Of a stretch of 64,000 bases of DNA, positions 10,041 to 64,000 are shown in pieces. Source of the DNA: Octopus sinensis (taxonomy: Eukaryota). The stretch covers positions 38,192,001-38,256,000 of the forward strand of contig NC_043007.1 of NCBI RefSeq assembly GCF_006345805.1. Reading direction: 5' to 3'. The notes under the pieces are model-generated. The model searched no databases. It had not been told where the DNA came from and worked only from the letters and a program-made list of their open reading frames with translations. The translations under genes and the position numbers were made by a program. How positions within the stretch are numbered: the first letter of the stretch is position 1; every line of letters begins with the position of its first letter.

Positions 10041-10079
<39 letters not shown>

Positions 10080-48077: not shown

Positions 48078-51000
48078 CCAGGTAGAAAGATAAAAGAACT
48101 TAACTAAACAGTTAAGTATGGAAAAAAAATGGTAAGTGCTTATCTGAGAATGCCAGGCTTCACAGCATGGAAAAACATACTGTAAAGCAATGAATGCATT
48201 CAATATGGACTGATCTGACGTTTCATAACAACATTTTAAATAACATTTCAAATAATTATTTTCATCTGTTTCTCTTTTCTTTCGTCCATTCTTTATCAGA
48301 CTTGAGAAAGTTGCTGAAGATTTAAGCCTTAACCTTACTCATGTCATTGTCCACAACTGCTGTCCCAAAATTCTCAGCAAACATCAGTCGTCAGGTGAAA
48401 TAAAGTTGCCATGTCATGGTAAGTGTTATCTTTGAATATCAAATCAATTTTAGGAGTTTAAAAAAGATTTTGCTTCTTTCTTCAATCTCTCATCTGTATG
48501 CAGTGATGATGATGATGGGAGTAGCAACACTGAGGAGAGGATGGAAGTGATAAATGTTTTACTGCTTCTCACATATTACTTATACTTTTATCGACTTTGG
48601 TTATTTTACCTTTAATGTAAGGTTACATTTCTGTATTTCTCAAATGAGAAATTATTGAAAAGGCATGTTTGTATGGTTGAGAAATTTGCTTCACAACCAT
48701 ATAGTTCAGACTCAGTCCCACTACACATTACTTTTGGCTTGTGTCTTCAACTATAGCACTGGGTCGATTAAAGCTTTACAAGTCGATTAGTGGATTTGAT
48801 AGACTGAAATTGAAAGAAGTCTATCTTGTGTGTGGGGGGGGGGGGGGTGCACCCTTTGTCTTGGCATAATGTAATGTTTGTAAATGAGCATCTGCCATTT
48901 CCAGTCTTCCATGGAAGACATATCTGATCACATGTCTTGCTTGGTAACAGGTGAGAGTTAGTGATGGGCAAGGCATCTGGCCATAGAAAATCTGCCTCAT
49001 TGAATTCCACATGACCCTCAAGCGTCAAAAGTGGACATTGTATGATGATAATGATGATGCCACCAATGTAGTAGTAGTAATAGTAGTAGTAGTAGTAGTA
49101 TATATGCTCAGGCAGATGACTTTATATAAAACGACCATCGTTTTCTATAATGTACCTAGCTGTTAGAAATAGGTAACATGCGATCACATGACCAACCAGA
49201 CTATCAGATATTGTTACACATTGCTGGTCACAATGCACTTTGCATCATTTAAGCCTTCAAATGACGCCACCCCTCTGGCTAGGCGAGTGGGCCAACATAC
49301 CCCCAGATTGAAGGAGGGCCTGGAGCAGGGAACTCCTCTGACCTATATGAGCATGAAAAGTGGACATTAAGAAATGATGATGAAATCAATGTGTGTGTGT
49401 TTGTGTTTGAAATAAATGAAAAAGAATGTCTGTGTTTATACCCTGTAACTTAGCAATTCAGTGAGCAGCAATTGCTAATTAAGTACTTGACTTAAAAATA
49501 ATTTGTGGGGTCAATATGATTGACTGAAACATTTCAAGGCAGTGCCCCAGCATGGCCACAGTCTAATAACTGAAACAAGAGTAGTAGTTGCTTGTTTTTT
49601 TTTTTGGCTTTTTTGGTTCAAATGTATTTTGATGTGTCTAGAGAGAGTCATTGTTTTGTTAGCCTGATTTTGTTGAATATTTACTAATTTGTTTTATTTG
49701 AAATTCTCATAACTATTGCAAATTTGCAATGTTCTAGATCTTTCTGGAAATTCCTTTGGAGGAGTGATTGTTTTGAACAACAAAGGTGCTTCAACATCAT
49801 CAAGTAATGCCGAGAAAGATGTAAGGACAATACTTACAAATTTGGTTCACGCTATGAAAGGTATGTAGTCATTAAGTTAGCATTACTACTGTACATTTAC
49901 TATTTATCATTCTAAATCAAATATTAAAAATTTCTTATGTTTAAATTTTGGTGTAGGTTTTGTATATGTCCCCATAACTTAGCAGTGTGGCGAAAAAGAC
50001 AATTTTATTGGTCTCTTTTGCTGAACCACTAACCTATGGAGACATAAAGAAATGAATGCTAATTATCAAGCAGTGGGGAGGAGGACACAAACACAAGCAC
50101 AAAGACACCCACAAATACTTACATGCATATATACAAAGCAATACCCAAAAGTAACTGGAAATGTTCTCTGTGGTTCAAGCCTATTGTAGTTCAAGCTTTC
50201 ACCACTAGAAGACACTAAGGCATCAGTCCACCGACTGGCATCTTGCCGTGAGGTCATACTGCCAAGTGGTGTGTCTGTTTTACAGTGCTTCTCCCCTGAA
50301 GTTTTAAAAGAAAAAGTTATGAGTGTTTGTTTCTCAAATTTGAGGGTGATAATATAGTTCTATACTTCTTTATGAATATAGTTCTGTGCTAGTGGCACGT
50401 AAAAAGCACCATCCGAATGTGGCCGATGCCAGTACCCCATGACTGGCCCCCATGCCAATGGCATGTAAAAAGGACTATCTGAACATGATCGATGCCAGGC
50501 TCATCTGACTGGCTCCTGTGCTGGTGGCATGTAAAAAGCACCCACTACACTCTCGGAGTGGTTGACATTAGGAAGGGCATCCAGCTGTAGAAACATTGCC
50601 AGATCAGATTGGAGCCTGGTGCAGCCTCTGGCTCTCCAGACCTCAGTAAAACCATCCAACCCATGCCAGCATAGAAAGCAAACATTAAATGATGATAAGG
50701 GGGACTTTTAATATGTGTCACCAGTATCATTGAGGTAATTTTCACTATGGTAAAATCTTAAATTATTATTTGACACATTATTAATTAGCATAATAACATA
50801 GCCTGGCCAAAACATGGATTACATGGAAAAATGTGAGCAAGAGAAATGATATTTTTAAGATTATAAACTTGGTAAAGTACAGAACAAGAAAATTTTCACT
50901 TAAAATATTGCAGCTAAGGATAAAATTTGAATATTAAAAATTATTTGATTTTAATTCACAAAATAACATTATAATTAAAAACGGTACCATCATTTTGTGA

Positions 51001-54000
51001 AAATACTGACACACTAGAATACTTAGAAAATGAAAGCCAGAAGTACCAACATGGTTAAAGGTTTATGCAAAGTAGAATAGTATATATGGTAGGCAAATTC
51101 ATTATGTAAAAGATTGGTATTGGGTCAAGACTAAAAATGTGAAGACTTAGCAATAACTTAGGCAGTAACTCAAGCAAATTTTACTGTGAATTTATTGTTA
51201 TAGATAGATTTTACTATAATATATAACTAATTTTTGTGTTATTCTATTTATTTTACCAACTAATTATGTACTTCTATTATTTTTTATAACCTACTTTCAA
51301 ATTTTTTATTATTAATTAATAATTAAAAAAAATTAATCTTTTTAAAGTGCAAAAATATTTGAATTGCGTTATTTTTAATTTTTAATAGAAGTAACAAGTA
51401 ATAACAAATAGAAGTAATAACTTATAATTAAATTTTTAGTTTTAATAAAAGCTAATATTTTCTAGATCTAAATATTTTATTTGAAATTTTATCCTTAGCT
51501 GCAATATCTTAAGTAAAAAATTTCTTGTTCTGTACTTTACCAGGTGTAATAAATTGTCCTGAACTCTTCCAAGTGAAATAATAATAATAACTTGTCCTGT
51601 ACTTTTCCAGGTTTATAATCTTAAGAATATTATTTCTCTTGCTCGCATTTTTCCATGTAATGTGTGTGTGTGTGTGCGCACGTGCGTGCATGCGTGCGTC
51701 TGTCTGTCTGTCACTTTCAAGTTTATCTCTATAGACTTCCTATAGAATTCAGAGCCAGTACTGCAAGTTACAATGTTTCATAACCAAATATGTCTATGTA
51801 AAAAATGTGATCAAAAAAATTATATGAAACATTGTAACTTAGAGTGCTGGCTCTGAATTCTATTGAAAATCTGTGGAGATTTCACTGCTAACACAACATT
51901 CTGTCTACAAAACTCACTCACAAACCATTGGTTGGCCTGGAGCTTTAGTAGAAGACACTTGCCCAAGGTGCCATTTAGTGGGACTGAACTTGAAACTGCA
52001 TGATTGAAAAGTGAACTTCTTAACCTCACAGCCATACCCGTACCTATATGTATGTTTTATTTTTACTCATTTCAGCCTATAAGCCGTAGGTATATTGGGG
52101 CACCACCATTACTGTATATAAATACATATATACATATATATATGAAACAAGGGATTAAATATCAGATACTCTTTAAAATAGCCTTTACATAATATTTTGA
52201 GAACAATAACCAGAACAACAACAAAAATTATAGCCAGTTTTTATGTTTTCCAAAATTTTCTTTCAGAATTATTTTTTCATTTTTAAATTGTCAAATTGTT
52301 TACTCCCATCTTCTTTAGATTTGTCTCCAAAACATAGCGGCAAGAATGGTTTCAATGCAGACTGTTTACAAGAGGCAGTGAAGTCCACCCGTATCAGCAA
52401 GACATTGGACAAAACTGTCAACTTCCGCGATATTGATCTGAGCCAGCTAAATCAGATAGAGCTCACCTGTTTTCTAACCAACCTTGTCAATGTTCTTATC
52501 ATCCACAGTTACATGTATATTGCTATTCAAGCTGTAAGTAAATCATCCCTTTTATGTTATTTTGTTTGTTTTATTTAGCTTTTTTGCTTTATTTTAGTTT
52601 ATTTTTTTATGGTTTCATTTGGGAGGAAGGGACTCTGTTCAAGTCTTTCACAGGATTCCCAAGATCTGATGGATCTTGCGAATCCTTTAGTTGCAAACCT
52701 ATGCTTGTTGAAAAACCATTGACAAGAAAGAAATCTCAGGCAGTAGACATTTGGGGAAGAATTACTGAGTGTGATGGTTAGTGCAGGTCCAGGGAGCAGA
52801 TCCTTGTTTCTATTTTACTACATTTTCAAGGGTTTTTCTTCATAGTTTAACCATTTTGTGAATATATATCTGAAGAAATACATTGTCGGTGTGTTTCAGT
52901 TAATTCTGAAAATAATCAAGAATTTGAAGGGATTTAGTAAAATTTATTAACTTTTTTAATTTGTATTATGATATTAAAATTTTTAAACAGAAATAGTTTT
53001 AATTTAAAAGTTTTAAAATGAGAGGTTCTGTATTAAAGAACCAGAGGTGTGATTTTATCTGAATTGCTGTGATTATACCTCATCCTTAACACCCTCTCAT
53101 ATCTGCTGTCATTCTCAACACCCTCTCATATCTGTCATCAAAAACCTCCATCTCCAGTGGTTTTCTAATAAGGATAGGTTTGCAACCAAAGGATTCGCAA
53201 GATCCATCAGACCTTGAGAACCCTGTGAAGGATTTGAACAGAGTCCCTTCCTCCCAAATGTCACTCTTTCATACCTCTGATGGCTATCTCTGTCATTGTG
53301 CATGTCTTTATTTTTCTTTCTCATCCATCACTCTCCCACCTTGCACATCATCTCTATTTTCTGATCTATCTACAGATTTATTGTACTTCTACTCTCTAGC
53401 CTTCCTGTACTGCCCTTTATCACCTCCTGTTTCCTAAGCCACTCCTATATCTTTCACCTTTCCCCACTTTACTAATACTTACCATTGATCACACTTTTTC
53501 CTTGTTCATCATTCCCTACATCCATCTATAGCTATCTGTCAGTCTCCTCACATGTCCTTGTGAACTTACCCACCTGCCCATCCCAATTTTCTGTACATAT
53601 TCTCTCTTATACTCTCTTGTATCTTGGGTGCATGCCTTGATCCCTCATTGTCGCCATCTTCTTTCCAGCTGCTCCCATTTTTATATAATGCAGAGTAGCC
53701 ATGTATCTTCTCTGTAGCATGACACCAATGCCTTTTCTTCTATCATACTTTAGTCTCCCACTGCCTGTATAAAATCACTTCTCTTTCTATCACAATTTCA
53801 ATCAGTTGAGGGTTCTTTTTCTTTGTCTTGTAAGTTACTTGGTGACCTCACTGGTGTTGGTTGTGTACTCTTTTATAGAGCATGACACCAGTGCTTGTTC
53901 CTCTATTATACGTTAGTCTTTCAACACCTTGTATAAAGCTGTCATAAAAAAAGCATCCAGTATGTACCGAATGTGTACATAGTCCATAGCTAATATCTTA

Positions 54001-55892
54001 CACTATATCAAACATTCTTTGAATATTTAATACTAACACTGATAAAAAAAAAGTGATACACATTAGTGAAAAACGCTCCCTGTAAAATGTACTGCCTTAT
54101 AAACCAACCTATAGAGTAAGATGTTCTTGATACAAGATGAAAATAGCTGGTATTTTGTAGCATCGCACCAAAATCTTGAATGTCATCTTAGTGTTATTCT
54201 TGATTATTGCAATTTGTCACCTATTTAGATTTTATTTAAACTCATGATAATAATAATAAACATTGTGTACAGTGCTCAGATGCACTACAACTCATCGAAA
54301 GTGTATATATAATCAGGTGTAGTTTCGACGGATTTCGGAAAGCATGAGGGCCTTAAAGGATGCAGTGTCATGGCAGTCAACAACTGACGCAGACAGTTTA
54401 TTCCATGCCTCAGCAACTCTGAGTGTGAAGAAATGTTTCCGAAAGTCATGGGAGCTGTGTTGTTTTCTGACTTTGTAGGCATGTCCACGTGTGTTAGACA
54501 CATGGAGATCAAAAAGGTGTTCAGTGTTGTTATTGGTGAGGTGGTTGACAACTTTGCGGGCGTTTACCAAGTCCGTCGCCAGACGCCGGAGCTTCAGTGA
54601 ATCCATGCCCAGGGAAACAAGGCGCTCAGAATATGGTAGGTGTCTGATGGAGGGTATGCGTTTGGTTGCACGTCTCTGAACAGATTCCAGGAGGTCAATG
54701 TTCTGAGCAAGATGCGTCTAGTTCTGTAGATAGGCATTCTAACCTGTAATTTGCCTGTCAATATGATTTAAGTTTTTTATTTTCTAGAGCCTTTCTCACT
54801 CCACCTGTAATGATTTTTATTTATATTTTTTGTAAATTCTAGGAGCAGCAACAATGCTGGGACACCTTGAAAGAAATGTTGCATGCTGGGAGTCATTCTG
54901 GTCTATGGAGTGACAACAACAGTATTGATCGTATCATCTGGCTGAGTCGATATGGTTATCAAGTTGGGCAACTAGGAATTGTCAGGTAAGACCAAAACAC
55001 TTTCATCTTCCTTCACATAGCTTCATTAAATTGAATTTACTCTTGTGGCTCACTGTTAGAATTTTCCATGTAAAATTTTTATCAGAGATTGAAAGAATTT
55101 CACTGTGTTCTTGTAAAAAGTTTCTCTCTCTAAAAAGGGTAGCTTTATTTGTTATTATTTCATTGGATGAGGAGAGGCTGTGATCATGACATACACAAAC
55201 CCTCCCAAATAGGTGAGGTTGGTACAGTTGTTGTTCTGTTTGAATGTCTGCAGACAGAGAATTACCGAGGGTTGTAATCTGGGTAGGAATGATTGATAAA
55301 GAGTTTTGTGGTGTTTAGGGATGATGAAAAGAGAGGCAGGAGCAATAGTTAGCTGATAGAGGTGGTGTATAATTGATAATAGTTGATAATAGAAACTATT
55401 GTTGTTGTTATTGTTGTAGTAGTAGTAGTACTGGTGTTGGTGGTGGTGGAGGAGGAGTAGGAGGAGATATGACTTACAGACACACTGTAAATCTGTTGTA
55501 GTCTTTAGCAATTAGATAGATAACTATTTTTTTTTTAAAGTACAGCTTACGAAATTTGTGTATGCATGTGTGTGTGCTTGTGCATGCATGTATGTAGCAG
55601 CAGTATTGACCTAGATATGAGAATTGTATTCCAGTGTGAACCACACCTGAACTTTGAAGACAGTTGCCATGAAATGTGCTGAACATGTATAATGCAGTGT
55701 GATTGTTAGTTATTAGCATTAAATGTGGAAGATCTGCAGAGATTGGAGAGAAATGAGTTGAATATGATGCATTGGATGTGTAATGTTAACTTCTGTAAAA
55801 CCATGAATGGGCTGAAAGAGAGAGAGAGAGAACAGTTGAGAACATTAATATATTAAATGATGTGTGAAACTAATAGATGAAAACAGCACAGA

Positions 55893-55931
<39 letters not shown>

Positions 55932-58694
55932 TGTGTGCTTGTTTCTGTGTGTCGGCATCATCACTGTCTGAACAAAAATAGTGACGCTCATTCACATCTT
56001 TAACAGTACATCCTGTTCATGACTGTGCTAGCATAACTGATACCTGCTGTGAATAGATAACATATATATACACACTAATATGTACACTTCCACATACATG
56101 TATAAGGTTTAAGACATGTTTTTATTTAACGAAGCAAAATTGGAATCGAAATGGTCTTGCCTTTCCCATTAGTCAGTCATGTGAGAGAGGAGAGAATTAC
56201 ATCAACAAGGTAACAAAGTGGTTATAGTGTTGGCTTGATAGAAGCTTATATTTTGTTCCTTTATACTAACCCTTTCGTTACTGTATTTATTTTGAGATGC
56301 TCTGTGTTTCTTTCAATTACTTTAAATATAACAAAGAATTTAGTAAAATAACTTAGTCATCATTCAGCTAGTGTTAGGAACATAAATTGTGACTAAGGTT
56401 TGCTGGAAGATTTTAATTCAAGACTTATGAAAACAAGACCGGGTTGGTAACGAAAGGGTTAAGATACTGAGACTTATCTAATAGCCAATGAAAAATGCCA
56501 GCTGTAACACATGACATCACACCACAACATACTACACTGCATTCCACCTGTCAATCACAATAGACCTATCACATTAATTATCATATATGTCCATGTATAA
56601 TATGCTATCATATATCATACACATCTTGCTATTGTTGGGGGCCTAAACTGTTGTGTATAATATACGGTGTTGCTTAACTGCTTCAAGAGTAGATAATCCT
56701 CCTATATGTAAAATACCAATATATTCATTTTTAATATTTACTTTTACATAAAATATTTTATGTAATTAAATATAATCTGAAAAATAATAAAATATTATTA
56801 CCTTGTTATCCTATATCATTATGAAAGTGAATGTGAACTATATCATTTAATAATATATATTATGCACATCTTGCATAATTAATTTTAATCTTGGTTCTGG
56901 TGAAAAATGTGTATATTATACATGGAGTTTTATGGGATCTTTTCGGTTTGAATGGCAGTTTTTTAAAATAATTTCCACGTAACTAAACACTTTTAAACTT
57001 CCTATACTGGTAGAATGTGTTTATAAAACATCTTTTTCTCTTGGCTTTATTGAGAAAATTCTATAGTTTGTAAGATATTTGTTGTTTTTTTTCATCAATT
57101 TCTACAATTTCAACCAATCAATGATGTGTATTGAGGTGAAAACATTCTGTGTCATATGAATATGTCCCTCGTTTAAGAAACAGATTGAGTTTATTTACAT
57201 TTCTGAAGAAAAAAGATACCCTCCCCCCACCCCTAACCCTAACTAACCCTAATCCTAAAACAGATTGAAATGCAATAGATAGATACTAGGGTCATAATTA
57301 TGGGTGACAATTTCATATGACACCACTAGAAAAAACTGCCGTTCAAACCGAAAAGATCTGTTTTATGTTGAATCTAACCAACCAGCCAACTAACAACCCA
57401 ACCAACAACCAACCACTTTAAGTTATTTAGTTTTTATATTGTTTGTTTTATTTTAATTTTGTTTTGTAGTATTTTCGATTTGAGATACATTCTCTTAAGA
57501 AATGGTCTGCCACGCCCTGGTCTATTAGGAGGGCTTTTGGAGGATCGTATTGATGGTAAGTGCTTTCTTCATTCTACTGTCTCTCCCTCTGTCTCCTACC
57601 ATCCATATTCACAATAACTGGAATGCAATAAAGTGCCAACTATTCTCAGGTGATGCTCTATTTTGTCAAACTATGACAAAATTGCTTTCTTCTGTTACCT
57701 GCTTCAGTCTAGCTTGCTGCAAATTGGGTACCATGGAGTTCATATGGACAATGGTTTATAGTAATGAATATTCATTGTTCTTGAGGTTGGTTAACAAATA
57801 GACTTACCTAAGTCTTGTGCGTGAATTTGATAGACATTAACTGAAAGAAGCTTGTTGTATATAAGTATGTGTGTGTTTGTACCTCCTTATCATCTTCACC
57901 ATTAACACCATTGTTGACTCCATGGAAATTTCTGTTTTTGACCCTTGATCTATTGCCAGGGAAAATCTTGGCATTGATGAGAATCAGCTGGCTGATCTAT
58001 TCCAGAGAACTTTCTGGCCTGGCTGTGCTACCAGTGGGCATTGCCAGTTCAAGGCAAACTCTATAGGCATGGAAGTGCCATCAACCAGGCCTTCCTGAGA
58101 TGAGCACAGAACAACAAAACTGTGCCTGAATTACAGATCATTATTCTTGTTTTTGTTGCTGTTGTTGACATGACAAATTCTCTAGTTGTGGTACCTAGAT
58201 AAGATGCACCCAGTACACTCTATTAAGTGGTTGGTGATAAGAGGGACATCTGGCCATAGAAAATTAAACTTACATGACAGGTGGACAATAACTTCAACTA
58301 AAAGTTATTTCATTTTTACCCAAAATGCTGTTGCTGATGATGATGATGGTGAATGTGGTAGTGGTAGTAGTGGCTCTACTACCACCACTGCCACTGTTGT
58401 TGTTGTTCCACTATATATTCATTACCTTTCAGATGTAAGATATCAATTTATGAGACTATTTTTTTCTTGACAGCCCTTGATATCTGTGACCCATGGTCTA
58501 TGTTCACACCTCGGCCTGACTACAGAATCACGTTTGTCATCTCCAATGGCTACACATCTTCACCTCCACTGCAGGTAATGTATCTTCCTTCTCTTATGTC
58601 AACAACACTGTCTTGTATAGGAACACAACTACTGTTTAGATTATTATTAATGCTTGTCATTGTTGTAACATAAGCTTACCGTTTTTACCATTAT

Positions 58695-58733
<39 letters not shown>

Positions 58734-61700
58734 GGTATGAGGCCTTGGGTCAGATATCCCCTTGCACCTCTCAAGTATCTTATCTCTCTTCTTCCTTTCA
58801 GTGTGCACATATACACTCACTTATACACACTTTTTCTCACATATACACTTGCATACATACATATACATACAGTCTCATGCACACACACTCTTATTTACGC
58901 TCACTCATACTGACATATATGATCAAATACATGCACGCACATGTTTACTCAACCACAACACATGTATACAAAATACAAAATTTATACTGGTGAAATGGTG
59001 TCGGCTGCATGAAAGCCGACCTACCATAATGGATTATGAGAGACTAAAAAGAAAAATTCAATTGTAATTTTTGTGATATTCATTTATGAAAGAAGGAAAA
59101 AAAAATTACGGAGATGTACTTGCATAGCAAGTGACCTGATCTGATATCATGTGCTGGAACGAAAACAATTGCAGCATGGAAGGTGTTTATAAGCCATTTA
59201 AGAAGCACACAAAACCATTAGATTTACTTCAACATTTAAATTTAATTTGTCAAAATACTTTCGTCACTTTGAGACCGCGACCTGTTCACTGACAAAGCTT
59301 CACTTGACTTCGGGGGTCGAATGGGCATTGCTCCTCATTTATATCTTTTCATATTTTCATTCGTTTAAAAAATTTTTTTCATCTTAATTCATCTTTTTGT
59401 ATTTTAAGTTCCCCGAGTTTATGTTTGTCTTGTTTGTATTGTCCCATTCTATGTATAGCCCCTTGTGGGTAATAAAAAATCAAACATTTATACAAAATGA
59501 CAGCTACCACAAAAACAAGAGATGTAAAAGCAGGTGTAACTGACTACATAATGCCAACATGTTATTTACAGGTATTAACACCAGAACTGCTGTCTCACCA
59601 GTTGGAGATTGCTGAGAGGTCATACCTGAGTAATACAGTTAGTGTTAATGTCTCCTCAGCTGGACACAGCACAGTAAGTCTCCAATTTATTTCCTCTTCC
59701 CCTTACTTAACCGATATTTCTTATCATGATTTCCTCTCTCACACTTGTTGCTTCACCTTTTTGTTGCTCAAACACCTCGCTTTAACTCTGCCTAATGTCA
59801 TTCACCTCTAACTTTAATCTAACTTTGCTACGCCTCATCTCATCTAATTCTGTCTCACCTCACCTTTTTTTAGATCTTGCCTGTTTCACCTCTAGTTCTC
59901 ACTCCTCATTTCAGTTTAGCTCTTCCGCACTTCAATCCAGCTCTTCCTCACCTCAGTCTAGCTCTTCCTTACCACATCTTGGCTCAGTCTAGTTCTGCAT
60001 CACATCACCTTACTCTATCTCGTCTCACATCTTTTCAACACTCCTCACTTTATCTCACGATAGTTCTACTACCACTTCACTTTACATCCACTCTACATCA
60101 CCCGACCTCACTTCGTTCTACTTCACTCCAACTCAGTTCATCTCACATCATATTATCTGTCAAGCTTTATCACATCTCACCTCTCCTTATCTCATTGTAG
60201 CTCTAACCTCACTTCCCTTAGTTCTGCCTTTCTTCACCTTGCTTCTCGTCACTGTTCTCATCATCATTCATTACTAGTATTAGTATTAAAGCAGTAAGCT
60301 GGCAGAATCATTAGCCTGCTGGGCAAAATGCTTAGTGACATTTCATTCATCATTACATTCTGAGTTCAAATTCTGCCAGGGTTGACTTTGCCTTTCAATC
60401 TTTTGGGGGTCGATAAAATATGTACTAGTTGAACACTGTGGTCAATGTAATCAACTTAGCCACATACCCCAAACCTGTTAACCTTGTGCTAAAACTTGAA
60501 ACCATTATTATTATTATTATTATTATTATTGTTAACACAGTGAGTTAGCAGCATCATTAGTATGTTGAACAAAATACATAAATATACCCAGGCCTATTCC
60601 CCATTTTTTTTAGGATGGGGTAGCCACAACAAGACACACACCAAGCATTTCATCCATTTCCAGCTCAAAGGGGTGGGCCCCATTCTATGCTCGGGTTAAG
60701 GCATAGAACACAACCTGCAATATCAGTAGTGGGGCCCAACAGCCTATGCTGGTTTACCCCTGTCACATCATGCTGGTTCCGTACCCCTTTGAGCAACACC
60801 AAAAATCATCCGTCCATAAACCCTCTCCAAGCTTTCCTATCATTTATAAACTCTCTTGCCTCTCTCATTCTGACACCTCTCACCACCAAAGCTTTCCTCA
60901 CTCCATCCATCCACAAAAAACGAGGTCTGCCTCTGGTTCTGCTGGTTCTCTGGTTCAGCCTTCATCACCTTCCTTACCATCTGCTCCTCATCCATCCTTA
61001 GTGGCAATTCTTCTGGCAGTGTGTGGGTTTGTCCTGTCATCACATAATAATTATAAATGGACACTAGAATAAGGATTATGATGAATATGATGGTGGTGGC
61101 AGCAGCACATCCTTGCATGCATAAGTACAGCCCTTTTTGTTGCCAACAAGAAAGGCATTTGGTCATAAAATGCTGCTTTAAAAATTCTATCCTAGACATG
61201 TCAGTATGGAAAAGTGGATGTAAAATGATGAGGAGGACTGATCCAATATTATTTTAATTCTTCATTATCAAATAATAAGGCGTAGGAGTAGCTGTGTGGT
61301 AAGTAGCTTGCTTACTAACTACATGGTTCCTGGTTCAGTCCCACTGTGTGGCACCTTGGGCAAGTGTCTTCTACTATAGCCTCGGGCTGACCAATGCCTT
61401 GTGAGTGGATTTGGTAGATTGAAACTGAAAGAAGCCCGTCATATATATGCATATATATATGTATGTGTGTGTATATGTTTGTGTGTCTGTGTTTGTCCCC
61501 CCCAACCGATGCTGGTGTGTTTACGTCCCTGTAACTTAGCGGTTCGGCAAAAGAGACCGATAGAATAAGTACTAGGCTTACAAAGGATAAGTCCTGGGGT
61601 CGATTTGCTCGACTAAAGGCGGTGCTCCAGCATGGCCACAGTCAAAATACTGAAACAAGTACAAGAGTATATAGTTCATGTAATTTGCAAAATTTTCCAA

Positions 61701-62222
61701 GAAAGAAAAAAGGCAGAGGAAAAGAAAAATCTTGATATAGAGAAAATAATGTTACAAAGAATAAGATAGCCAAAAGGAAAAGTGGTTTGGTGTTTTGGGG
61801 TGACTTGAACTGACAGTTTTGATATTGATTCAATGATTTATGTGCTGTGTACAGGTATTGGTTCCTGACCTTCTGTGTGAGTACCAACATGATTTCCCCA
61901 GCTCGGAGGAAGCCAAAGTCTACTATAACTCCCCATGGGAGGAACTGTTGCTGTACATTAGGGACCATGCTGATACTGAACTTGCAACCAAGTTAACTGA
62001 TTTTCTTGAAAGTAAGTAACATGAGTTTCTTTAGCTTCTGCTTCCCTTTACTGCCCCCCTCCCTACACAACTCTCTGCTCTCTCCATCTCTCTTTCTCTC
62101 TCTCTCACCATTTCTTTCCCCATATTCTCTTTTTTTTCTCTCTTGTATTTCCTTTTCTTTTCTTCTATCACTATCTTTTTTTTCTCCTTCACTATCCTTT
62201 TCTTCTCTCCTTCTTCCTCTAT

Positions 62223-62269
<47 letters not shown>

Positions 62270-63657
62270 ACCTCACACCTCTAATCTCTCTCCCCCAACT
62301 TCTCACCTCTCTCTTCCACTTATCATTTCTTTTTCCATTTCTCACTCTTCCCCTTCCCCCACCTATCTCTTCACCTCTCACCTCCTCTCGTCTTCTCCCC
62401 TACCTCTTGTCCTCTCCCCTACCTCTTATCCTCTCCCCACCTCCTACCTGTCTCCACATCTCTTAACCCTCTCCTCTGCCCACCTGTTGCCCCACCTTTA
62501 TCTTCTGACTCCTCAGCTTCTTCCAACTCTGCTCCTCTCTATACCTGCCTACTCCCTGCTTTCCTCTTCTCTATGCCCACCCTCTCCCTGCTCTGCCCCT
62601 CGTCATACCCTCCCTCTCCCCAAACTTGATCTTTACCCCACATTTTACCATCACCCTTTCTCCTCCCCATCTCTTACCTCTCTTCACATGTATTTCAGAC
62701 CCCACTACTGATCGAGATTCAAGCCTGAAAGTGCTGCCCCAGACTAATGATACCAAATTCTTGTACATATTTGATCCGAGTCATTTGAAGAAAGTGATGG
62801 AGAAGTCTGAAAGATCCCATACGGTGAGCTTGAACCATGAGCAGAACATTAAGTACAATGCTTCTTCCTCCAAACTTGAAGCAGACTACTCAATGTTCAA
62901 ACTGACCAGCAATGCCCTGGAATACATCAAATCTGAATCTCCACTTGTTGCCACATTGGTCAGTCTTGTGTGCCATGACGACCTTGATAGCAACAGCCAG
63001 GAGGACAGTCTTGAAGAGGATGAACAAGCAAATGATGACGAGTCCTGGATGAAGTCCAAATCTTCAGTATCTGATATAAGCCTGGTTGATATCAAAAGCT
63101 ACCGCTACCAAAAACTGTCTGTTGACTTCCCTGTCCTGAAACAACGCTTGCTGCAAAACATAATACCCCTGGTTCAAACAGAACACTCGGATGTAAATTT
63201 TGGAGATGAAGCCCTGTTGAAGTTTATGTCTTCGGAAATTTCCTGTGATATCAAAATGGCCATTCTCAGCTTGCCAGACAGCAAGAAATACTTATCGGTG
63301 GTTTCTCGTTTACTCAATGAATGCATACATTCCAGAAAATGGCTGCAAGCATTGAACATCATAGACAGTCTACCGGTGACTCTGAAACAAGAGAATGGTG
63401 ATTTCATCCTGCTCCATGATTTCGTTCTATGTTGCCTTGCCAAAAAAGCGTGTGATGAAGAAGACAAAAAACTAGAGGCTTATGCCAAGATGTTCTACAA
63501 CAGTGAAATCCAAGTGCGGACCATTTTGAATATTGTAAGGGGCCTTCCGTTGAAGAAAGGGATTGAACTTTTGGAAGCGTGTCTTTCCAAAGAACTTTCT
63601 GTACAACTTCGTTCAGCTGTGATTTCCAAATTAAAGCAACTCAAGATATTTTGTAAG
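3901..63657 (+). CDS. ZFYVE26: Spastizin / zinc finger FYVE domain-containing protein 26, joined CDS of 22 exons, 3'-incomplete
   Basis: Exons join in frame via GT-AG introns (6201 nt, 2067 codons, no stop). Collinear motif matches to human spastizin as recalled: PFGNE..LFRFFC..GQFELARACVP ~ PFGKE..LFGFFC..GEWELAQACVP; HSMLYVLQQATRLASLREHEVLDLLQKV ~ HSVLYTLHHLTNLPALREEDVLKLLQKV; LKSRISKLSQVVSEAQWR ~ LQSRLHRLSKVVSEAQWR; AMILFDLACS ~ AMAAFDLACS; LTSNALEYIKSESPLVATL ~ LTSSALAFLKSRSKLLATV. Confidence 0.95.
10490..10577 (+). CDS. ZFYVE26: Spastizin coding exon 2
   Basis: tatacag|T; (S)VGSTQLKSPHHLSWICLLEYLKLEPYELK; AAG|gtattt; phase 2 to 0. Confidence 0.88.
11313..11640 (+). mobile_element. tRNA-derived SINE (family F)
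   Basis: A-box-like TGGCTCAGCAGTTAG, B-box-like GTTTGATTCC, then TTGAGCAAGACACTT and CACTCAGCTGTAGAAATGAG typical of SINE bodies. Confidence 0.55.
12433..12850 (+). mobile_element. SINE family A, full-length copy
   Basis: Head TGTGTGGTTAG..GGGTTCAGTCCCACTGCGTGGCACCTTGGGCAAGTGTCTTC, internal (TA)/(TG) microsatellite, tail ..CAGCATGGCC..TGACTGAAACAAGTAAAAAGA. Other copies at about 11860-12240(-), 14900-15610, 15900-16050(-), 21400-21560, 26560-26770(-), 32640-32810, 36305-36480, 42410-42570(-), 43300-43465(-), 48660-48830, 51890-52050(-). Confidence 0.85.
13430..13665 (+). repeat. Interspersed repeat family D ending GGAAAAGTGGAC(A/G)TTAAATGATGATGA
   Basis: Homologous copies at about 2625-2745, 15655-15870(-), 32820-33050, 36500-36715, 46690-46900, 48850-49065. 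Confidence 0.65.
13714..14537. mobile_element. SINE family A copy (-, 13893-14295) nested inside another family A copy (+, head 13714-13880, tail about 14325-14537)
   Basis: Head and tail of the + copy are separated by a complete reverse-complement copy inserted in the TA-rich linker. Confidence 0.85.
14544..14910 (+). pseudogene. Helitron-type PIF1 helicase relic
   Basis: FVAVSSGIAMTLLKQDSNAHT*LEIP...LLRDACLF, frameshift, IYDESLMYQQHLFKALD*MVKDVLNNNRLFDGKLLIHG. Compare the Helitron consensus AVASSGIAATLL.GGRTAHS.FKIP and IIWDEAPM..AVDR.LRD....PFGGK. Confidence 0.8.
16311..16474 (+). mobile_element. LTR-like repeat (TGTTG...CATAACA, 16311-16460) followed by PBS-like TGGCAATGAGGAT
   Basis: TG..CA ends and internal AATAAA. 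16462-16474 differs by two CpG-type transitions from TGGCGACGAGGAT, the complement of the tRNA-Ser(GCT) 3' end as recalled. The last ~60 bp recur at 21334-21394. Confidence 0.45.
16602..17570 (-). mobile_element. 5'-truncated CR1-type LINE with uninterrupted RT C-terminal frame
   Basis: GSVLGPLLFLVFINDLP..LLFADDIK..KDLGILVD..LVRPILEY..LERVQRLATR..RRHRGDLI..WNKLP, about 294 codons without a stop. 3'UTR hairpin CCATGT-CCCCCT-ACATGG; (TAAC)n tail at 16602-16622. Confidence 0.93.
17835..18195. repeat. Imperfect tandem repeat, unit about 150-160 bp, about 2.3 copies
   Basis: Recurring AAGGATTTATAAGTCAG..CACTA..GTAG..CTACCAGTA.TAATGTAGA.TTGGTACT and TGTGGAACAA. Confidence 0.75.
18230..19663 (+). 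mobile_element. Decayed ORF1-only retroelement, unit 1 (L1/Tx1-type ORF1 with CCHC knuckle)
   Basis: GYGIEMAVQA..LRMVVEGRPPICYLCGEKGHMKVRCP (knuckle 18667-18708), E/K-rich linker, no RT or endonuclease remnants, conserved 3' end 19556-19663. Confidence 0.7.
19860..21337 (+). mobile_element. Decayed ORF1-only retroelement, unit 2
   Basis: RGRKYGTVEVRFANEQEA, RIGKVPLEIKEAWLVAAV, LRVVVEGRPPTCYQCGEKGHIRIKCP (knuckle 20522-20563); 3' end 21260-21337 nearly identical to that of unit 1. Confidence 0.7.
21675..21764 (+). CDS. ZFYVE26: Spastizin coding exon 3
   Basis: tttgcag|CCA; PSDVETLKRDVEFRILLSDASSATDSNTIQ (cf. human RRKLEFLLLSED); CAG|gtctgg; phase 0 to 0. Confidence 0.85.
23490..23851 (-). 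mobile_element. Non-autonomous Helitron, 362 bp
   Basis: On the - strand: A|TCTATATATAC... to ...GGTCATAGTGCTAG|T. This gives 5'-TC, 3'-CTAG, insertion between A and T and no TSD, with a terminal 19-bp-stem hairpin at 23489-23529. Confidence 0.8.
24200..24560 (-). mobile_element. Highly decayed CR1/Jockey-type LINE 3' fragment
   Basis: Reverse strand reads KAQVRPIMEC.. and ..TLQPLAH, resembling YKAQVRP.MEY..LQPL.HRR. Confidence 0.45.
25243..25893 (+). CDS. ZFYVE26: Spastizin coding exon 4
   Basis: catatag|GAG; ELYIFHKL...WPQLYFKCMKDNQHFLESYV (cf. AWKVAYFYCLSNNKHFLEQIL); GTG|gtaaga; 217 codons. Confidence 0.92.
27173..27340 (+). CDS. ZFYVE26: Spastizin coding exon 5
   Basis: tacacag|GAA; EAAISLISSGRFDEL...LKSLVLLVGWPYC...LLESK (cf. 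LSCLLVLLGWTHC); AAG|gtaaga; phase 0 to 0. Confidence 0.92.
28999..29087 (+). CDS. ZFYVE26: Spastizin coding exon 6
   Basis: ttctacag|ACA; TPCQHPALDKGCQKLQHQINLIRWCLEKS (cf. ACDGLWAHLEVLEWCIQQS); AG|gttggt; phase 0 to 2. Confidence 0.9.
29594..30018. mobile_element. MITE-like element with 69-bp terminal inverted repeats
   Basis: 29594-29662 is the reverse complement of 29950-30018 with 2 mismatches; abuts (TA)n. Confidence 0.75.
30056..30166. repeat. Near-perfect palindrome, arms about 48 bp
   Basis: TTTCCGTAATGAGATAAAAAAACC..TTTTAGAACAT / ATGTTCTAAAA..GGTTTTTTTTATCTCATTACGGAAA with a loop of about 12 nt. Confidence 0.85.
33515..34640 (-). mobile_element. RTE-type LINE 3' part with Cys/His-rich insert in the RT region
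   Basis: LYLAFVD..KAFDRVPR, LLYADDLAL, WKQGLESKGLRINVAKTK, CSIYTKGVGRNSIRCTQCKLWTHKKC, SFRYLGD, LHGSETW, RGRPRKTWDEVVK. Confidence 0.88.
34640..35014 (+). mobile_element. Mariner transposon 3' fragment
   Basis: DNA.., WETLPHPPYSPDIAPSDYYLFHSLQNHL, ..LLDRWKSIVEN; ends in TIR-like TTATGGGATGACCCAAT. Confidence 0.88.
35721..35908 (+). CDS. ZFYVE26: Spastizin coding exon 7
   Basis: attgcag|A; ...LVNHSMLYVLQQATRLASLREHEVLDLLQKVSLTKTP; G|gtaaca; phase 2 to 1. Confidence 0.92.
38414..39742 (+). CDS. ZFYVE26: Spastizin coding exon 8 (1329 nt)
   Basis: ttctttag|CC; LYRSFCILKNVQDAIL, VEILENVFSLLFVS, GLLTNEYLVRDILDLLQESL, VVSEAQWRFQLV; T|gtgagt; phase 1 to 1. Confidence 0.95.
39958..40439. mobile_element. 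Inverted (tail-to-tail) pair of SINE family B copies: + 39958-40192, - 40215-40439
   Basis: GGCGGTGAGCTGGCAGAA..TCAAATTCCGCCGAGGTCGACTTTGCCTTTCATCCTTTCGGGGTC and its reverse complement. Other copies at about 6990-7185, 9830-10040, 28588-28750, 46965-47155, 60290-60500. Confidence 0.85.
40645..40916 (+). CDS. ZFYVE26: Spastizin coding exon 9
   Basis: cctgtag|CT; Ser/Arg-rich stretch, then DMLLSNRALLVKCLKQGKFIEAHQVIK (cf. SLLASCILRGNFAEAHQVL); AAA|gtaagt; phase 1 to 0. Confidence 0.93.
41350..41626 (+). repeat. Interspersed repeat family C (SINE-like) ending CATGCTAGCATGGAA..TTAAATGATGATGAT
   Basis: Homologous copies at about 11090-11280, 30925-31218, 31755-31898, 50385-50697 and reverse copies near 32090-32260, 36730-36900, 37830-37990. 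Confidence 0.75.
41721..42197 (+). CDS. ZFYVE26: Spastizin coding exon 10
   Basis: ttactag|TTG; LFKMEDSAEVAEVTFLE...QLASVAAAGV...AMILFDLACSAC...ECK; AAG|gtttgt; phase 0 to 0. Confidence 0.9.
42777..43061. repeat. Long inverted repeat, 119-bp arms, 47-bp spacer
   Basis: 42777-42895 versus reverse complement of 42943-43061, only a handful of mismatches. Confidence 0.9.
43845..44395 (-). mobile_element. RTE-type LINE internal fragment, probably the same family as 33515-34640
   Basis: KAIKKMKTEKAPGPSGITAEMIK..KGGALDRNNYRGIKL.DQVMKITERVI..DEMQFG. Confidence 0.85.
44700..45106 (+). CDS. ZFYVE26: Spastizin coding exon 11
   Basis: ccactag|ATA; ILGFPGFLDML (cf. GIRGFPVVL)...YSFLT; AG|gtatgg; phase 0 to 2. 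Confidence 0.9.
46446..46558 (+). CDS. ZFYVE26: Spastizin coding exon 12
   Basis: gttccag|A; QISSNSLITNYKNYLLSLYKHTQILANLLNDNEPNSS; G|gtaagc; phase 2 to 1. Confidence 0.88.
47190..47286 (+). CDS. ZFYVE26: Spastizin coding exon 13
   Basis: ccatcag|AA; TAIMKNYFKVLDEGPVITIGKMMFGKRIPPH (cf. NPFVLL..LLFERQVPPE); AA|gtaagt; phase 1 to 2. Not in the ORF track. Confidence 0.9.
47740..47991. mobile_element. Mariner-derived MITE in a (TA)n array
   Basis: Arms of about 93 bp (47740-47832 / 47900-47991) begin TTGG(C/G)TTG..GCATAATTATTGTGGCTTTT. The internal - strand reads LPSRWETVIEVDGEYALE*, a mariner C-terminus. Confidence 0.82.
48300..48418 (+). CDS. ZFYVE26: Spastizin coding exon 14
   Basis: ttatcag|A; LEKVAEDLSLNLTHVIVHNCCPKI (cf. 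LSLSVPQVIVSCCCEP); G|gtaagt; phase 2 to 1. Confidence 0.92.
49738..49860 (+). CDS. ZFYVE26: Spastizin coding exon 15 (start of insert absent from vertebrate protein as recalled)
   Basis: gttctag|AT; DLSGNSFGGVIVLNNKGASTSSSNAEKDVRTILTNLVHAMK; G|gtatgt; phase 1 to 1. Confidence 0.8.
50818..51661. repeat. Inverted repeat with arms of about 120 bp around an extremely AT-rich core
   Basis: TTACATGGAAAAATG.GAGCAAGAGAAAT..TTGCAGCTAAGGATAAAATTT at 50818-50935 versus reverse complement at about 51485-51661; the right arm carries an internal duplication. Confidence 0.75.
52319..52533 (+). CDS. ZFYVE26: Spastizin coding exon 16 (DUF547-like, N-terminal motif)
   Basis: tctttag|AT; ...FRDIDLSQLNQIELTCFLTNLVNVLIIHSYMYIAIQA; GCT|gtaagt; phase 1 to 0. 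Confidence 0.88.
52617..53259. repeat. Inverted repeat / foldback element with arms of about 105 bp
   Basis: ATTTGGGAGGAAGGGACTCTGTTCAA..GATGGATCTTGCGAATCCTTT.GTTGCAAACCTAT at 52617-52721 versus reverse complement of 53155-53259. Confidence 0.82.
54245..54712 (-). mobile_element. Short 5'-truncated CR1-type LINE
   Basis: QNIDLLESVQRRATKRIP..LPYSERLVSLGMDSLKLRRLATDL..NTRGHAYK..HFFTLRVAEAWNKL, open to the stop at 54313; (TTA)n-like tail. Confidence 0.88.
54843..54985 (+). CDS. ZFYVE26: Spastizin coding exon 17 (DUF547-like)
   Basis: attctag|GAG; EQQQCWDTLKEML...SIDRIIWLSRYGYQVGQLGIV; AG|gtaaga; phase 0 to 2. Confidence 0.86.
56270..56458. mobile_element. piggyBac-type MITE, 189 bp
   Basis: CCCTTTCGTTAC...GTAACGAAAGGG termini, flanked by CTAA on the left (one mismatch to TTAA) and TTAA on the right. 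Confidence 0.75.
56937..57359. mobile_element. Non-autonomous TIR element containing telomere-like repeats
   Basis: GATCTTTTCGGTTTGAATGGCAGTTTTTT versus AAAAAACTGCCGTTCAAACCGAAAAGATC (1 mismatch); internal CCCTAACCCTAACTAACCCTAATCC. Confidence 0.75.
57470..57555 (+). CDS. ZFYVE26: Spastizin coding exon 18 (DUF547-like)
   Basis: ttttgtag|T; (S)IFDLRYILLRNGLPRPGLLGGLLEDRID; G|gtaagt; phase 2 to 1. Confidence 0.86.
58474..58574 (+). CDS. ZFYVE26: Spastizin coding exon 19 (DUF547-like core motif)
   Basis: ttcttgacag|CC; (A)LDICDPWSMFTPRPDYRITFVISNGYTSSPPLQ; CAG|gtaatg; phase 1 to 0. Confidence 0.86.
59572..59673 (+). CDS. ZFYVE26: Spastizin coding exon 20 (DUF547-like)
   Basis: atttacag|GTA; VLTPELLSHQLEIAERSYLSNTVSVNVSSAGHST; ACA|gtaagt; phase 0 to 0. 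Confidence 0.86.
60780..61000 (-). mobile_element. RTE-like LINE extreme 3' coding relic
   Basis: Reverse strand reads RTRGRPRFLWMDGVRKAL..AREFINDRKAWRGFM. Confidence 0.6.
61279..61666 (+). mobile_element. SINE family A, young full-length copy
   Basis: Highly similar to the 13714-14537 copies over both head and tail. Confidence 0.88.
61855..62011 (+). CDS. ZFYVE26: Spastizin coding exon 21 (DUF547-like C-terminal part)
   Basis: gtgtacag|GTA; VLVPDLLCEYQHDFPSSEEAKVYYNSPWEELLLYIRDHADTELATKLTDFLE; A|gtaagt; phase 0 to 1. Confidence 0.86.
62030..62690 (+). repeat. Polypyrimidine low-complexity tract including (CT)n
   Basis: Seen directly; it generates several spurious L/S/F-rich ORFs. Confidence 0.9.
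62699..63657 (+). CDS. ZFYVE26: Spastizin coding exon 22
   Basis: atttcag|AC; returns to spastizin homology at LTSNALEYIKSESPLVATLVSL and ends SKLKQLKIFCK (cf. RKLAELQVYQK); AAG|gtattt; phase 1 to 0. Confidence 0.93.
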
Positions 63658-64000
63658 GTATTTCAATTTGCTTTCCTTTCATTTTTTTAGATATTTTGAT
63701 TTATTTTATTCTCTTTTCTGCATTTTTCTTCGTTTATGTCCCCTTTTCATATAACATACACACTAGGGATTTTCAACCTGAACTGCAACAAAGAGGGAAA
63801 CTATGTGATTGATTAAAATCACTTTTCAGAATAAATCGTTAATTTTCTCCCAAAAATATCTCTATTAATCCACAGTATAGTCTTTGGCTGACCAATGCCT
63901 TGTGAACGAAATTTGCTAGATGGATGCTGTCTGGAAGGTGTTGTGAATGTTTGTACATTTATGTGGGTGCATATGTATGTATGTATGTATGTATGTATGT

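What the first reader, a model, noticed from the sequence alone, without database searches (positions are those of the whole stretch)
49738..62780. Spastizin carries an internal multi-exon DUF547-like domain not seen in vertebrate ZFYVE26
Seen: exons 15-21 (309 codons) splice in frame between VIVHNCCP (exon 14) and LTSNALEYIKSESP (exon 22). In human spastizin as I recall it, these anchors are only about 65 residues apart. The insert reproduces the DUF547 motifs in order: RDIDLSQLNQIELTCFLTNLVNVLIIH ~ VDL..LS.EEKLAFFINLYNALVIH; RYGYQVGQLGIVSIFDLRYILLRNG ~ Y.IGG..YSL.DIE.GILRGN; PDYRITFVISNGYTSSPPLQVLTPELLSHQLEIAERSYL ~ DPRIHFAL.CG..SCPP...Y....L..EL..AA..FL; VLVPDLLCEYQHDF ~ V.LSKIF.WY..DF; ELLLYIRDH ~ LL.FI..YL. 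Established: spastizin works with spatacsin and AP-5 in endolysosomal sorting and autophagic lysosome reformation. DUF547 has unknown function and occurs in bacteria, in plants and in glutaredoxin-DEP-DUF547 proteins. Inference: this lineage has an extra folded module on the AP-5/SPG11/SPG15 coat. That links DUF547 to membrane trafficking and implies either a lineage-specific gain or a loss in vertebrates. I am not aware of a description of this fusion, but it may exist unannotated in other invertebrates.
Basis: partly seen in the sequence, partly recalled or inferred. Interest (0 to 1): 0.9.

Follow-up and report, generated by a model that had tools for sequence, protein, structure and literature searches.

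The report
Ancestral DUF547 domain inside octopus spastizin
The octopus version of the spastic-paraplegia protein spastizin (ZFYVE26/SPG15) really does carry a folded ~300-residue DUF547 domain in its middle; this is the old animal-wide form of the protein (choanoflagellate to amphioxus), and vertebrates, beetles and a mosquito have lost it, which is probably why it has not been discussed.

Summary
Confirmed. The window (Octopus sinensis, chromosome contig C11) holds exons 1-22 of ZFYVE26-like (XP_036363256.1). Exons 15-21 (927 nt, 309 codons, all GT-AG) join in frame between the anchors VIVHNCCP and LTSNALEYIK. The joined peptide hits Pfam DUF547 over the whole model (E 3e-11, 43.8 bits, cut-off 27).

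The anchors are 394 residues apart in octopus and 277-445 in about 90 invertebrate orthologues. They are 61-94 apart in vertebrates (66 in human 8YAD chain C), 19-25 in beetles and 16 in Culex. A family HMM of the block finds no remnant in those short forms.

The block is present in amphioxus, hemichordates, echinoderms, molluscs, a nemertean, a rotifer, arthropods, cnidarians and a choanoflagellate. So it is ancestral, not a cephalopod gain. It was lost on the vertebrate stem and again in some insects. A 9,992-nt cephalopod transcript carries DUF547, FYVE and the C-terminal TPR in one ORF.

AlphaFold gives a confident globular module on disordered tethers, and no solved structure resembles it. 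The family's signature residues are kept.

The function is inferred, not shown. The closest DUF547 relatives sit beside DEP, PTEN-C2, RasGAP, PH, GRAM and DENN domains. That suggests a second membrane- or ligand-sensing module alongside FYVE. Pfam hits for it are already stored for about 90 database orthologues, but I found no paper describing it.

The parts
48300..48418 (+). Exon 14 of ZFYVE26-like. It ends the upstream alpha-solenoid and holds the N-terminal anchor VIVHNCCP (48343-48366). It is followed by a phase-1 intron.
   Evidence: The anchor is conserved in 118 orthologues, including vertebrates.
49738..49860 (+). Exon 15 (123 nt). It encodes the disordered N-terminal tether, the short strand VIVLNN and the start of the first long helix of the module.
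   Evidence: In the AF2 model, residues 24-43 of the fragment have pLDDT below 50.
52319..52533 (+). Exon 16 (215 nt). It encodes the helices before the Pfam core and the core's first signature, F-x2-N-x2-N-x4-H (FLTNLVNVLIIH, within 52426-52506).
   Evidence: N1534 and H1542 are 100% conserved in 118 spastizin-type sequences and 98% conserved in 58 other DUF547 sequences.
54843..54985 (+). Exon 17 (143 nt). It encodes a variable loop and then the RYGYQVGQLG motif (Y1590, G1593).
57470..57555 (+). Exon 18 (86 nt). It encodes the SIFDLRYILLRNG helix.
58474..58574 (+). Exon 19 (101 nt). It encodes DPW...PDYRITFVISNGYTSSPPLQ, including the conserved F1648 and P1658.
59572..59673 (+). Exon 20 (102 nt). 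It encodes the helix VLTPELLSHQLEIAERSYL and marks the end of the Pfam core (residue 1680).
61855..62011 (+). Exon 21 (157 nt). It encodes VLVPDLLCEYQHDF...ELLLYIRDH, the C-terminal part of the extended DUF547 module. It is followed by a phase-1 intron.
   Evidence: Other DUF547 proteins match the block profile up to about position 360 of 419.
62699..63658 (+). Exon 22 (960 nt). Its first ~67 codons encode a small beta/alpha extension and the disordered C-terminal tether. The C-terminal anchor LTSNALEYIKSESP (62902-62943) follows, and the alpha-solenoid resumes.
   Evidence: Fragment residues 388-414 have pLDDT below 50.
62025..62698 (+). A C/T-rich low-complexity tract of about 670 nt, containing (TC)n and 19-37-nt repeats, that runs up to the exon 22 acceptor.
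   Evidence: Open-frame translations; tandem repeats; C-rich skew.

Best explanation
Shown:
- The window encodes the N-terminal two thirds of the Octopus sinensis spastizin orthologue (ZFYVE26/SPG15).
- Between two conserved solenoid helices (anchors at residues 1414-1421 and 1816-1825) lies a 394-residue block. It is encoded by the tail of exon 14, exons 15-21 and the head of exon 22.
- The block is a complete DUF547 domain of the extended, ~300-residue kind. It folds as one globular alpha/beta unit (about residues 1445-1760) and hangs on two poorly conserved, disordered tethers.
- The block is the ancestral state. It predates animals, since a choanoflagellate has it, and it was kept in cnidarians, protostomes, echinoderms, hemichordates and amphioxus.
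- In vertebrates it is replaced by a 61-94-residue Ser/Pro-rich linker, and in beetles and Culex by 16-25 residues.
- Exons 15-21 form a symmetric phase 1-1 cassette of 927 nt, so removing them keeps the frame.

Inferred:
- The module is functional, because it is as conserved as the solenoid and keeps the residues that are near-invariant across the DUF547 family (F1531, N1534, N1537, H1542, Y1590, G1593, F1648, P1658).
- It acts as a second tethered sensing or binding head of the SPG11-SPG15 scaffold, next to the similarly tethered PI3P-binding FYVE domain. It probably recognises a membrane lipid or a membrane-bound partner at the endolysosome.
For: Gene model and Pfam hit.

Collinear orthology to human ZFYVE26: 8yad_C, 712 bits, with FYVE and TPR_ZFYVE26 present.

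Spacing between the anchors in 116 orthologues. Human spacing of 66 residues.

No remnant in the short forms: a block HMM scores 2 bits or less in vertebrate, beetle and Culex proteins, against 64-348 bits in proteins that Pfam had missed.

Taxa with the block:
- amphioxus P0150, 341 bits, with all three Pfam domains
- cnidarians Sanderia and Hydractinia
- choanoflagellate Acanthoeca P0288, with both anchors, DUF547 at 31.9 bits and TPR_ZFYVE26 at 88.5 bits
- crustaceans, a centipede, a rotifer and hemipteroid insects

Single mRNA: Logan contig L014 from SRR25158156 is 9,992 nt with one uninterrupted 3,169-codon ORF holding DUF547, FYVE and TPR.

Fold: mean pLDDT 77.8, pTM 0.76, with low-confidence tethers.

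Conservation: identity of octopus to bivalve, hemichordate and amphioxus orthologues is 36-39% in the Pfam core, 29-31% in the N-terminal solenoid and 12-25% in the tether.

Signature residues are shared with 58 other DUF547 proteins.

Company DUF547 keeps in those 58 closest relatives: DEP 23, PTEN-C2 7, glutaredoxin 7, RasGAP 4, kinase 3, plus PH, GRAM, DENN, PRELI and TLDc.

Partner genes are present in the octopus genome: SPG11 and AP5Z1.

In human SPG15 the FYVE domain is likewise held on long invisible linkers (bioRxiv 10.1101/2024.06.14.598999).

A plant DUF547 protein with no transmembrane segment is polar at the plasma membrane (bioRxiv 10.64898/2026.08.17.745151).
Against: - No function is known for any DUF547 protein. 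The mechanism therefore rests only on guilt by association and on conservation.
- Foldseek found no solved structure like it (best E 0.65), so the fold gives no functional hint.
- Vertebrates, beetles and a mosquito do without the module, so it is not essential for the core SPG11-SPG15/AP-5 function.
- I had no RNA-seq reads from O. sinensis itself. The NCBI model is a prediction, and the transcript evidence comes from another cephalopod (63-77% identical by region).
- In a quick tree of the domain core, the choanoflagellate sequence did not group with the animal ones. Its common origin rests on the shared anchors and position.
Confidence: 0.8

Rival explanations
1. The module is a lineage-specific gain: a DUF547 gene was captured into ZFYVE26 in cephalopods or molluscs.
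For: The first search, made with the poorly conserved N-terminal part, returned only cephalopods, an oyster and one unnamed protein.
Against: The same block lies between the same anchors in about 90 orthologues from at least eight animal phyla and in a choanoflagellate.
Confidence: 0.01
2. It is an artefact. Exons 15-21 belong to a separate gene nested in a ZFYVE26 intron, or to a rare alternative transcript, and gene predictors have fused them.
For: XP_036363256.1 is a computed model. The cassette is phase-symmetric, so an isoform that skips it would also be in frame.
Against: - Every splice phase fits, and there is no start or stop inside the cassette.
- An assembled cephalopod mRNA holds everything in one ORF, and the identical protein was seen on up to 23 contigs of about 10 kb.
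- Independent annotations in dozens of species agree.
- The block is conserved at the same level as the rest of the protein.
Confidence: 0.02
3. The module is a catalytic domain (for instance acting on a lipid head group or a thiol substrate), not a binding or sensing head.
For: A polar cluster (N-x2-N-x4-H, plus Y) is near-invariant in both spastizin-type and other DUF547 proteins. DUF547 is often fused to glutaredoxin or PTEN-type phosphatase domains.
Against: The two cysteines of the C-G-x-S-x-C-P stretch, the obvious redox candidates, are present in only about 30% of the other DUF547 proteins and are replaced in spastizin. No enzymatic fold was matched.
Confidence: 0.2
4. The module is an inert structural bulge of the solenoid with no interaction of its own. 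It is retained by inertia and was therefore lost easily, at least twice.
For: It was lost independently in vertebrates and in beetles and Culex while the rest of the protein was kept.
Against: It has been retained since before animals arose. Its core is more conserved than the flanking solenoid, and the family's signature residues are kept. An inert insert would be expected to drift as its tethers do (12-25% identity).
Confidence: 0.12

Closest known systems
Human spastizin ZFYVE26/SPG15 (PDB 8YAD chain C; AP5:SPG11-SPG15 complex, bioRxiv 10.1101/2024.06.14.598999)
   Same: It is a collinear orthologue (712 bits). It has an alpha-solenoid, a FYVE domain on long linkers, a further solenoid and the C-terminal TPR_ZFYVE26. 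Both anchors are conserved.
   Different: The human protein has 66 residues of Ser/Pro-rich linker where octopus has 394 residues including a folded DUF547 module. The octopus protein is 3,193 aa against 2,539 aa.
Invertebrate ZFYVE26 orthologues in public databases (e.g. Branchiostoma XP_019625924.1, Haliotis, Acanthaster, Hymenoptera 'Sptz')
   Same: They share the architecture DUF547 + FYVE + TPR_ZFYVE26, with the block between the same anchors.
   Different: Nothing essential differs. Arthropod blocks are shorter (277-409 aa). The octopus gene is one more member of this group.
Glutaredoxin-DEP-DUF547 proteins (plant class IV GRX-like; octopus copy at G000:C2:189.48 Mb)
   Same: They carry the same extended DUF547 module and the same signature residues.
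   Different: The DUF547 is C-terminal in a small (~480-630 aa) protein next to GRX and DEP, not inserted in a 3,000-aa solenoid. The octopus copy scores 133.7 bits against Pfam, versus 43 bits for the spastizin module. These proteins are also uncharacterised (PMC13621322).
PTEN-C2-DUF547 (Entamoeba EhPTEN-type), RasGAP-DEP-DUF547, DENN-GRAM-DUF547, PRELI-PH-DUF547, MIP1-zipper-DUF547 (plant UCHIGAWA)
   Same: DUF547 is combined with phosphoinositide-, membrane- or small-GTPase-related domains, as it is with FYVE in spastizin.
   Different: The partners are different and none is a coat scaffold. No function has been assigned to the DUF547 part in any of them.

Membership tests
DUF547 (Pfam PF04784) | Match to the Pfam model above its gathering score, over the whole model | tested here: met
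   43.8 and 42.6 bits against a cut-off of 27; profile positions 2-125 of 125.
DUF547 (Pfam PF04784) | Family-wide conserved residues: F-x2-N-x2-N-x4-H, Y-x2-G, F...P | tested here: met
   F1531, N1534, N1537, H1542, Y1590, G1593, F1648 and P1658 are at 95-100% in 118 spastizin-type sequences and at 76-98% in 58 other DUF547 sequences.
DUF547 (Pfam PF04784) | Homology extends over the whole ~300-residue module, not only the 125-position Pfam core | tested here: met
   Other DUF547 proteins match block-profile positions ~45-360 of 419 at E 1e-26 to 1e-33.
DUF547 (Pfam PF04784) | Characteristic fold | not testable with these tools
   No solved DUF547 structure turned up (Foldseek against PDB, best E 0.65). 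The model itself is confident (pLDDT 77.8).
Spastizin / ZFYVE26 / SPG15 orthologue | Collinear similarity to human ZFYVE26 along the protein | tested here: met
   8yad_C: E 1e-212, 712 bits, six ordered segments.
Spastizin / ZFYVE26 / SPG15 orthologue | FYVE zinc finger and C-terminal TPR_ZFYVE26 domain | tested here: met
   FYVE at 2406-2467 (51 bits); TPR_ZFYVE26 at 3062-3188 (117 bits). Both are encoded downstream of the window.
Spastizin / ZFYVE26 / SPG15 orthologue | Partner genes SPG11 and AP-5 present in the same genome | tested here: met
   Spatacsin_C exons at C17:24.776-24.790 Mb. SPG48 (AP5Z1) exons at C5:49.135-49.139 Mb.
Spastizin / ZFYVE26 / SPG15 orthologue | Forms the SPG11-SPG15 heterodimer, binds AP-5 and binds PI3P membranes | not testable with these tools
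   Needs biochemistry or complex modelling.

The most novel reading that the evidence does not exclude
The ancestral AP-5/SPG11/SPG15 coat had two tethered membrane-reading heads: FYVE for PI3P, and DUF547 for a second lipid or membrane-bound ligand. Vertebrates, beetles and flies simplified this to FYVE alone. Invertebrate spastizin would then be the first setting in which a function can be assigned to the large, uncharacterised DUF547 family. It would also show that the human disease protein is a reduced form.
Probability: 0.3. Interest if true: 0.7.

Novelty: new variant of a known kind. Interest (0 to 1): 0.5.

Why it matters
Work on spastizin has mostly used human cells, mouse, zebrafish and Drosophila (my own knowledge). 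The vertebrates sampled here lack this module, as does the one dipteran sampled (Culex). The structural description of human SPG15 is simply 'solenoid-FYVE-solenoid'.

The ancestral protein carries a conserved extra globular domain. This has three consequences:
- It changes the picture of what the original AP-5-associated scaffold looked like.
- It gives a clean natural experiment, because there are at least two independent losses.
- It places DUF547 in a defined cell-biological context where it can be tested. DUF547 is an uncharacterised family: 4,608 representatives, each standing for a cluster at 50% identity, match this block at E ≤ 0.001.

It is not a new kind of system. Both families are known, and the combination is already visible in automated domain annotation.

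Tried and rejected
- **Structural neighbours.** Foldseek of the AF2 model against the PDB found nothing below E 0.65, including 8yad_C.
- **Degenerate remnant in vertebrates.** MAFFT placed the vertebrate 'LTNISSLAHLHAY' under the octopus 'LTNLVNVLIIHSY'. A block HMM run with all filters off gave 2 bits or less for every vertebrate, beetle and Culex protein. I treat the MAFFT placement as chance.
- **Redox idea.** The canonical C-G-A-S-G-C-P of the octopus GRX-DEP-DUF547 is N-G-Y-T-S-S-P in spastizin, which looked like a lost active site. However, those cysteines are present in only 27-30% of the other DUF547 proteins, so nothing can be concluded from them.
- **Possible protist orthologues.** The AT-rich metagenome contigs (P0196, P0178, P0185; 24-30% GC, intron-poor) looked like protists, but in the domain tree they group with a bdelloid-type rotifer. 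They are not evidence for a deeper origin.
- **Searches for non-holozoan SPG15** (plants, Amoebozoa). The word-indexed searches returned only animals. The full HMMER scan's top 150 held no recognisable non-holozoan spastizin.
- **P0001.** This is a rough concatenate of window exons that I made only to pass the length filter of the homology search. It is not a gene model.
- **Ten downstream 10-kb pieces** (L002-L011) were fetched but not needed once the NCBI protein was found.
- **A Pfam call on five full proteins** exceeded the size limit.
Full report
**What is there**

The window is Octopus sinensis contig C11:38,192,001-38,256,000, + strand. A tblastn of the NCBI protein XP_036363256.1 ('zinc finger FYVE domain-containing protein 26-like', 3,193 aa, P0002) places 22 exons in the window, covering residues 1-2068. 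The first is at 3901 and the last ends at 63658.

I rebuilt the exons from the raw sequence before I had seen the database protein:
- exon 14: 48300-48418
- exon 15: 49738-49860
- exon 16: 52319-52533
- exon 17: 54843-54985
- exon 18: 57470-57555
- exon 19: 58474-58574
- exon 20: 59572-59673
- exon 21: 61855-62011
- exon 22: from 62699

All have AG...GT borders and matching phases. The product is identical to P0002.

Introns 14 and 21 are both phase 1, so the seven exons form a symmetric cassette.

**Is it DUF547?**

Yes. The joined peptide matches Pfam PF04784 at E 3e-11 with 43.8 bits (gathering score 27), over profile positions 2-125 of 125. In the whole protein the hit covers residues 1521-1680. 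FYVE is at 2406-2467 and TPR_ZFYVE26 at 3062-3188.

A profile of the whole inter-anchor block (alignment A1, 25 orthologues) was run against 1.84 billion representative proteins. It gave 4,608 hits at E ≤ 0.001 and 92 at E ≤ 1e-30. Ordinary DUF547 proteins match profile positions ~45-360 of 419. The inserted unit is therefore a full ~300-residue DUF547 module, of which Pfam models only the core.

The residues that are near-invariant in 58 other DUF547 proteins are equally invariant in 118 spastizin-type sequences: F1531, N1534, N1537, H1542, Y1590, G1593, F1648 and P1658. The two cysteines seen in the canonical octopus GRX-DEP-DUF547 are not a family constant.

**Is it absent from vertebrates?**

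Yes. phmmer of P0002 against PDB sequences finds human ZFYVE26 (8yad_C, 712 bits) in ordered segments. The strong alignments stop near octopus 1423 / human 1235 and resume at octopus 1934 / human 1399.

Using a lizard sequence as a bridge, the human anchors are VIVSCCCE at 1226-1233 and LTSSALAFLK at 1300-1309, 66 residues apart.

I counted the residues between the two anchor columns in an alignment of 116 orthologues:

| Group | Residues between anchors |
|---|---|
| Octopus | 394 |
| Molluscs, nemertean, echinoderms, hemichordate, cnidarian | 380-445 |
| Hymenoptera, Orthoptera, Odonata, ticks | 277-409 |
| Lamprey, reptiles, teleosts | 61-94 |
| Coleoptera | 19-25 |
| Culex | 16 |

An HMM of the block alone, with all filters off, scores 2 bits or less in the short forms. 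It scores 64-348 bits in three proteins that precomputed Pfam had not flagged. No remnant is detectable.

**How old is it?**

The block lies between the same anchors in all of the following:
- amphioxus (P0150, 341 bits, with all three Pfam domains)
- two hemichordates and echinoderms, including crinoids
- gastropods, bivalves and cephalopods
- a nemertean and a rotifer
- crustaceans, a centipede, ticks and many insect orders
- the cnidarians Sanderia and Hydractinia
- the choanoflagellate Acanthoeca spectabilis (P0288: both anchors aligned, DUF547 at 31.9 bits, TPR_ZFYVE26 at 88.5 bits)

The module therefore predates animals. It was lost after cephalochordates split off and before the lamprey-gnathostome split, and it was lost independently in beetles and in at least one dipteran. 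Tunicates, Lepidoptera, Drosophila, sponges and non-holozoan eukaryotes were not reached.

**Is it one transcript?**

I had no octopus reads. A Logan assembly from run SRR25158156 (L014, 9,992 nt) carries a single uninterrupted ORF of 3,169 codons, with UTRs on both sides, encoding DUF547, FYVE and TPR_ZFYVE26. By region it is 63-77% identical to the octopus protein. Identical or near-identical proteins were assembled on dozens of ~10-kb contigs. Independent gene models in dozens of species agree.

**Structure**

AlphaFold2 on residues 1400-1835 with the 25-sequence alignment gave mean pLDDT 77.8 and pTM 0.76. The model has these parts:
- the two anchor regions are helical
- fragment residues 24-43 and 388-414 have pLDDT below 50
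- between them lies a confident mixed alpha/beta unit

The tethers are also the least conserved part, at 12-25% identity between phyla. The Pfam core is at 36-39% and the N-terminal solenoid at 29-31%.

Foldseek against the PDB found nothing (best E 0.65). Human SPG15 is described as solenoid-FYVE-solenoid, with the FYVE domain on long linkers that are invisible in the map. The DUF547 module looks like a second head tethered in the same manner.

**Mechanism (inferred)**

No DUF547 protein has a known function.

The 58 non-spastizin proteins closest to this module are eukaryotic multidomain proteins. Their partner domains, by number of proteins, are:
- DEP: 23
- PTEN-type C2 with phosphatase: 7
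- glutaredoxin: 7
- RasGAP: 4
- protein kinase: 3
- PH, GRAM, DENN, PRELI and TLDc: one or two each

Nearly all these partners are membrane-, phosphoinositide- or small-GTPase-related.

A plant DUF547 protein without a transmembrane segment is polar at the plasma membrane.

The octopus genome has SPG11 and AP5Z1.

My best reading is that the module is a functional binding or sensing head. It would give the ancestral SPG11-SPG15 scaffold a second input besides PI3P. A catalytic role and an inert structural role are the rivals.

**Novelty**

Precomputed Pfam hits already flag the combination in about 90 public proteins. This is therefore not hidden sequence, and the octopus gene is an ordinary member of the invertebrate form.

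No paper in the searchable library mentions DUF547 together with ZFYVE26 or FYVE in this sense. The structural paper on the human complex does not mention it either.

I rate it a real, previously undiscussed ancestral variant of a known protein. It is of moderate interest.

Noticed in passing
window 49738-62011 (exons 15-21): The seven exons form a phase 1-1 symmetric cassette of exactly 927 nt. Skipping or deleting them would leave exon 14 joined in frame to exon 22, giving a vertebrate-like short form. I saw no isoform of that kind among database proteins.
   Followed up: partly
window 18487-18711 and 20354-20623 (+), within intron 2: Two related ORFs end in a CCHC zinc knuckle (Pfam zf-CCHC, 23-24 bits): '...VVEGRPP.CY.CGEKGH...CP'. 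They look like gag-like retroelement remnants. They lie in a stretch with strong G and A excess at 16-22 kb.
   Followed up: partly
window 54313-54717 (-): A 134-aa open frame by eye resembles the C-terminal end of a LINE-type reverse transcriptase. It lies 125 nt upstream of exon 17, on the other strand. It has no Pfam hit.
   Followed up: partly
window 62025-62698: About 670 nt of C/T-rich low-complexity DNA, with (TC)22 and 19-37-nt repeats, runs right up to the exon 22 acceptor. This is an unusually long pyrimidine tract.
   Followed up: partly
window 11982-12248, 14040-14399, 42295-42525 (+) and 61315-61641 (-): A recurring open-frame fragment ('...LPKVP(H/R)SGTEP...') appears in several introns on both strands. 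It looks like copies of an interspersed repeat (SINE-like).
   Followed up: no
L012 = G000:C2:189481762-189482136 (-): The octopus genome has an apparently intronless 478-codon glutaredoxin-DEP-DUF547 gene with a strong canonical DUF547 (133.7 bits).
   Followed up: partly
L013 = G000:C11:22410312-22410470 (+): This is an exon of a third DUF547-containing gene (39.6 bits, profile positions 16-66). It is on the same chromosome, about 15.8 Mb upstream of the window.
   Followed up: no
P0288 (Acanthoeca spectabilis, EukProt EP00035_P004432): The choanoflagellate orthologue has DUF547 and TPR_ZFYVE26 but no Pfam FYVE hit at E ≤ 0.01.
   Followed up: no
L015 (ENA ERZ19566080 scaffold_1525), gene at 3862-10698: An AT-rich (24-30% GC) metagenome contig encodes a spastizin-like protein as a 2,278-codon uninterrupted ORF, with asparagine-rich insertions inside the DUF547 block. 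A separate downstream ORF carries TPR_ZFYVE26. In a quick tree it groups with a rotifer.
   Followed up: partly
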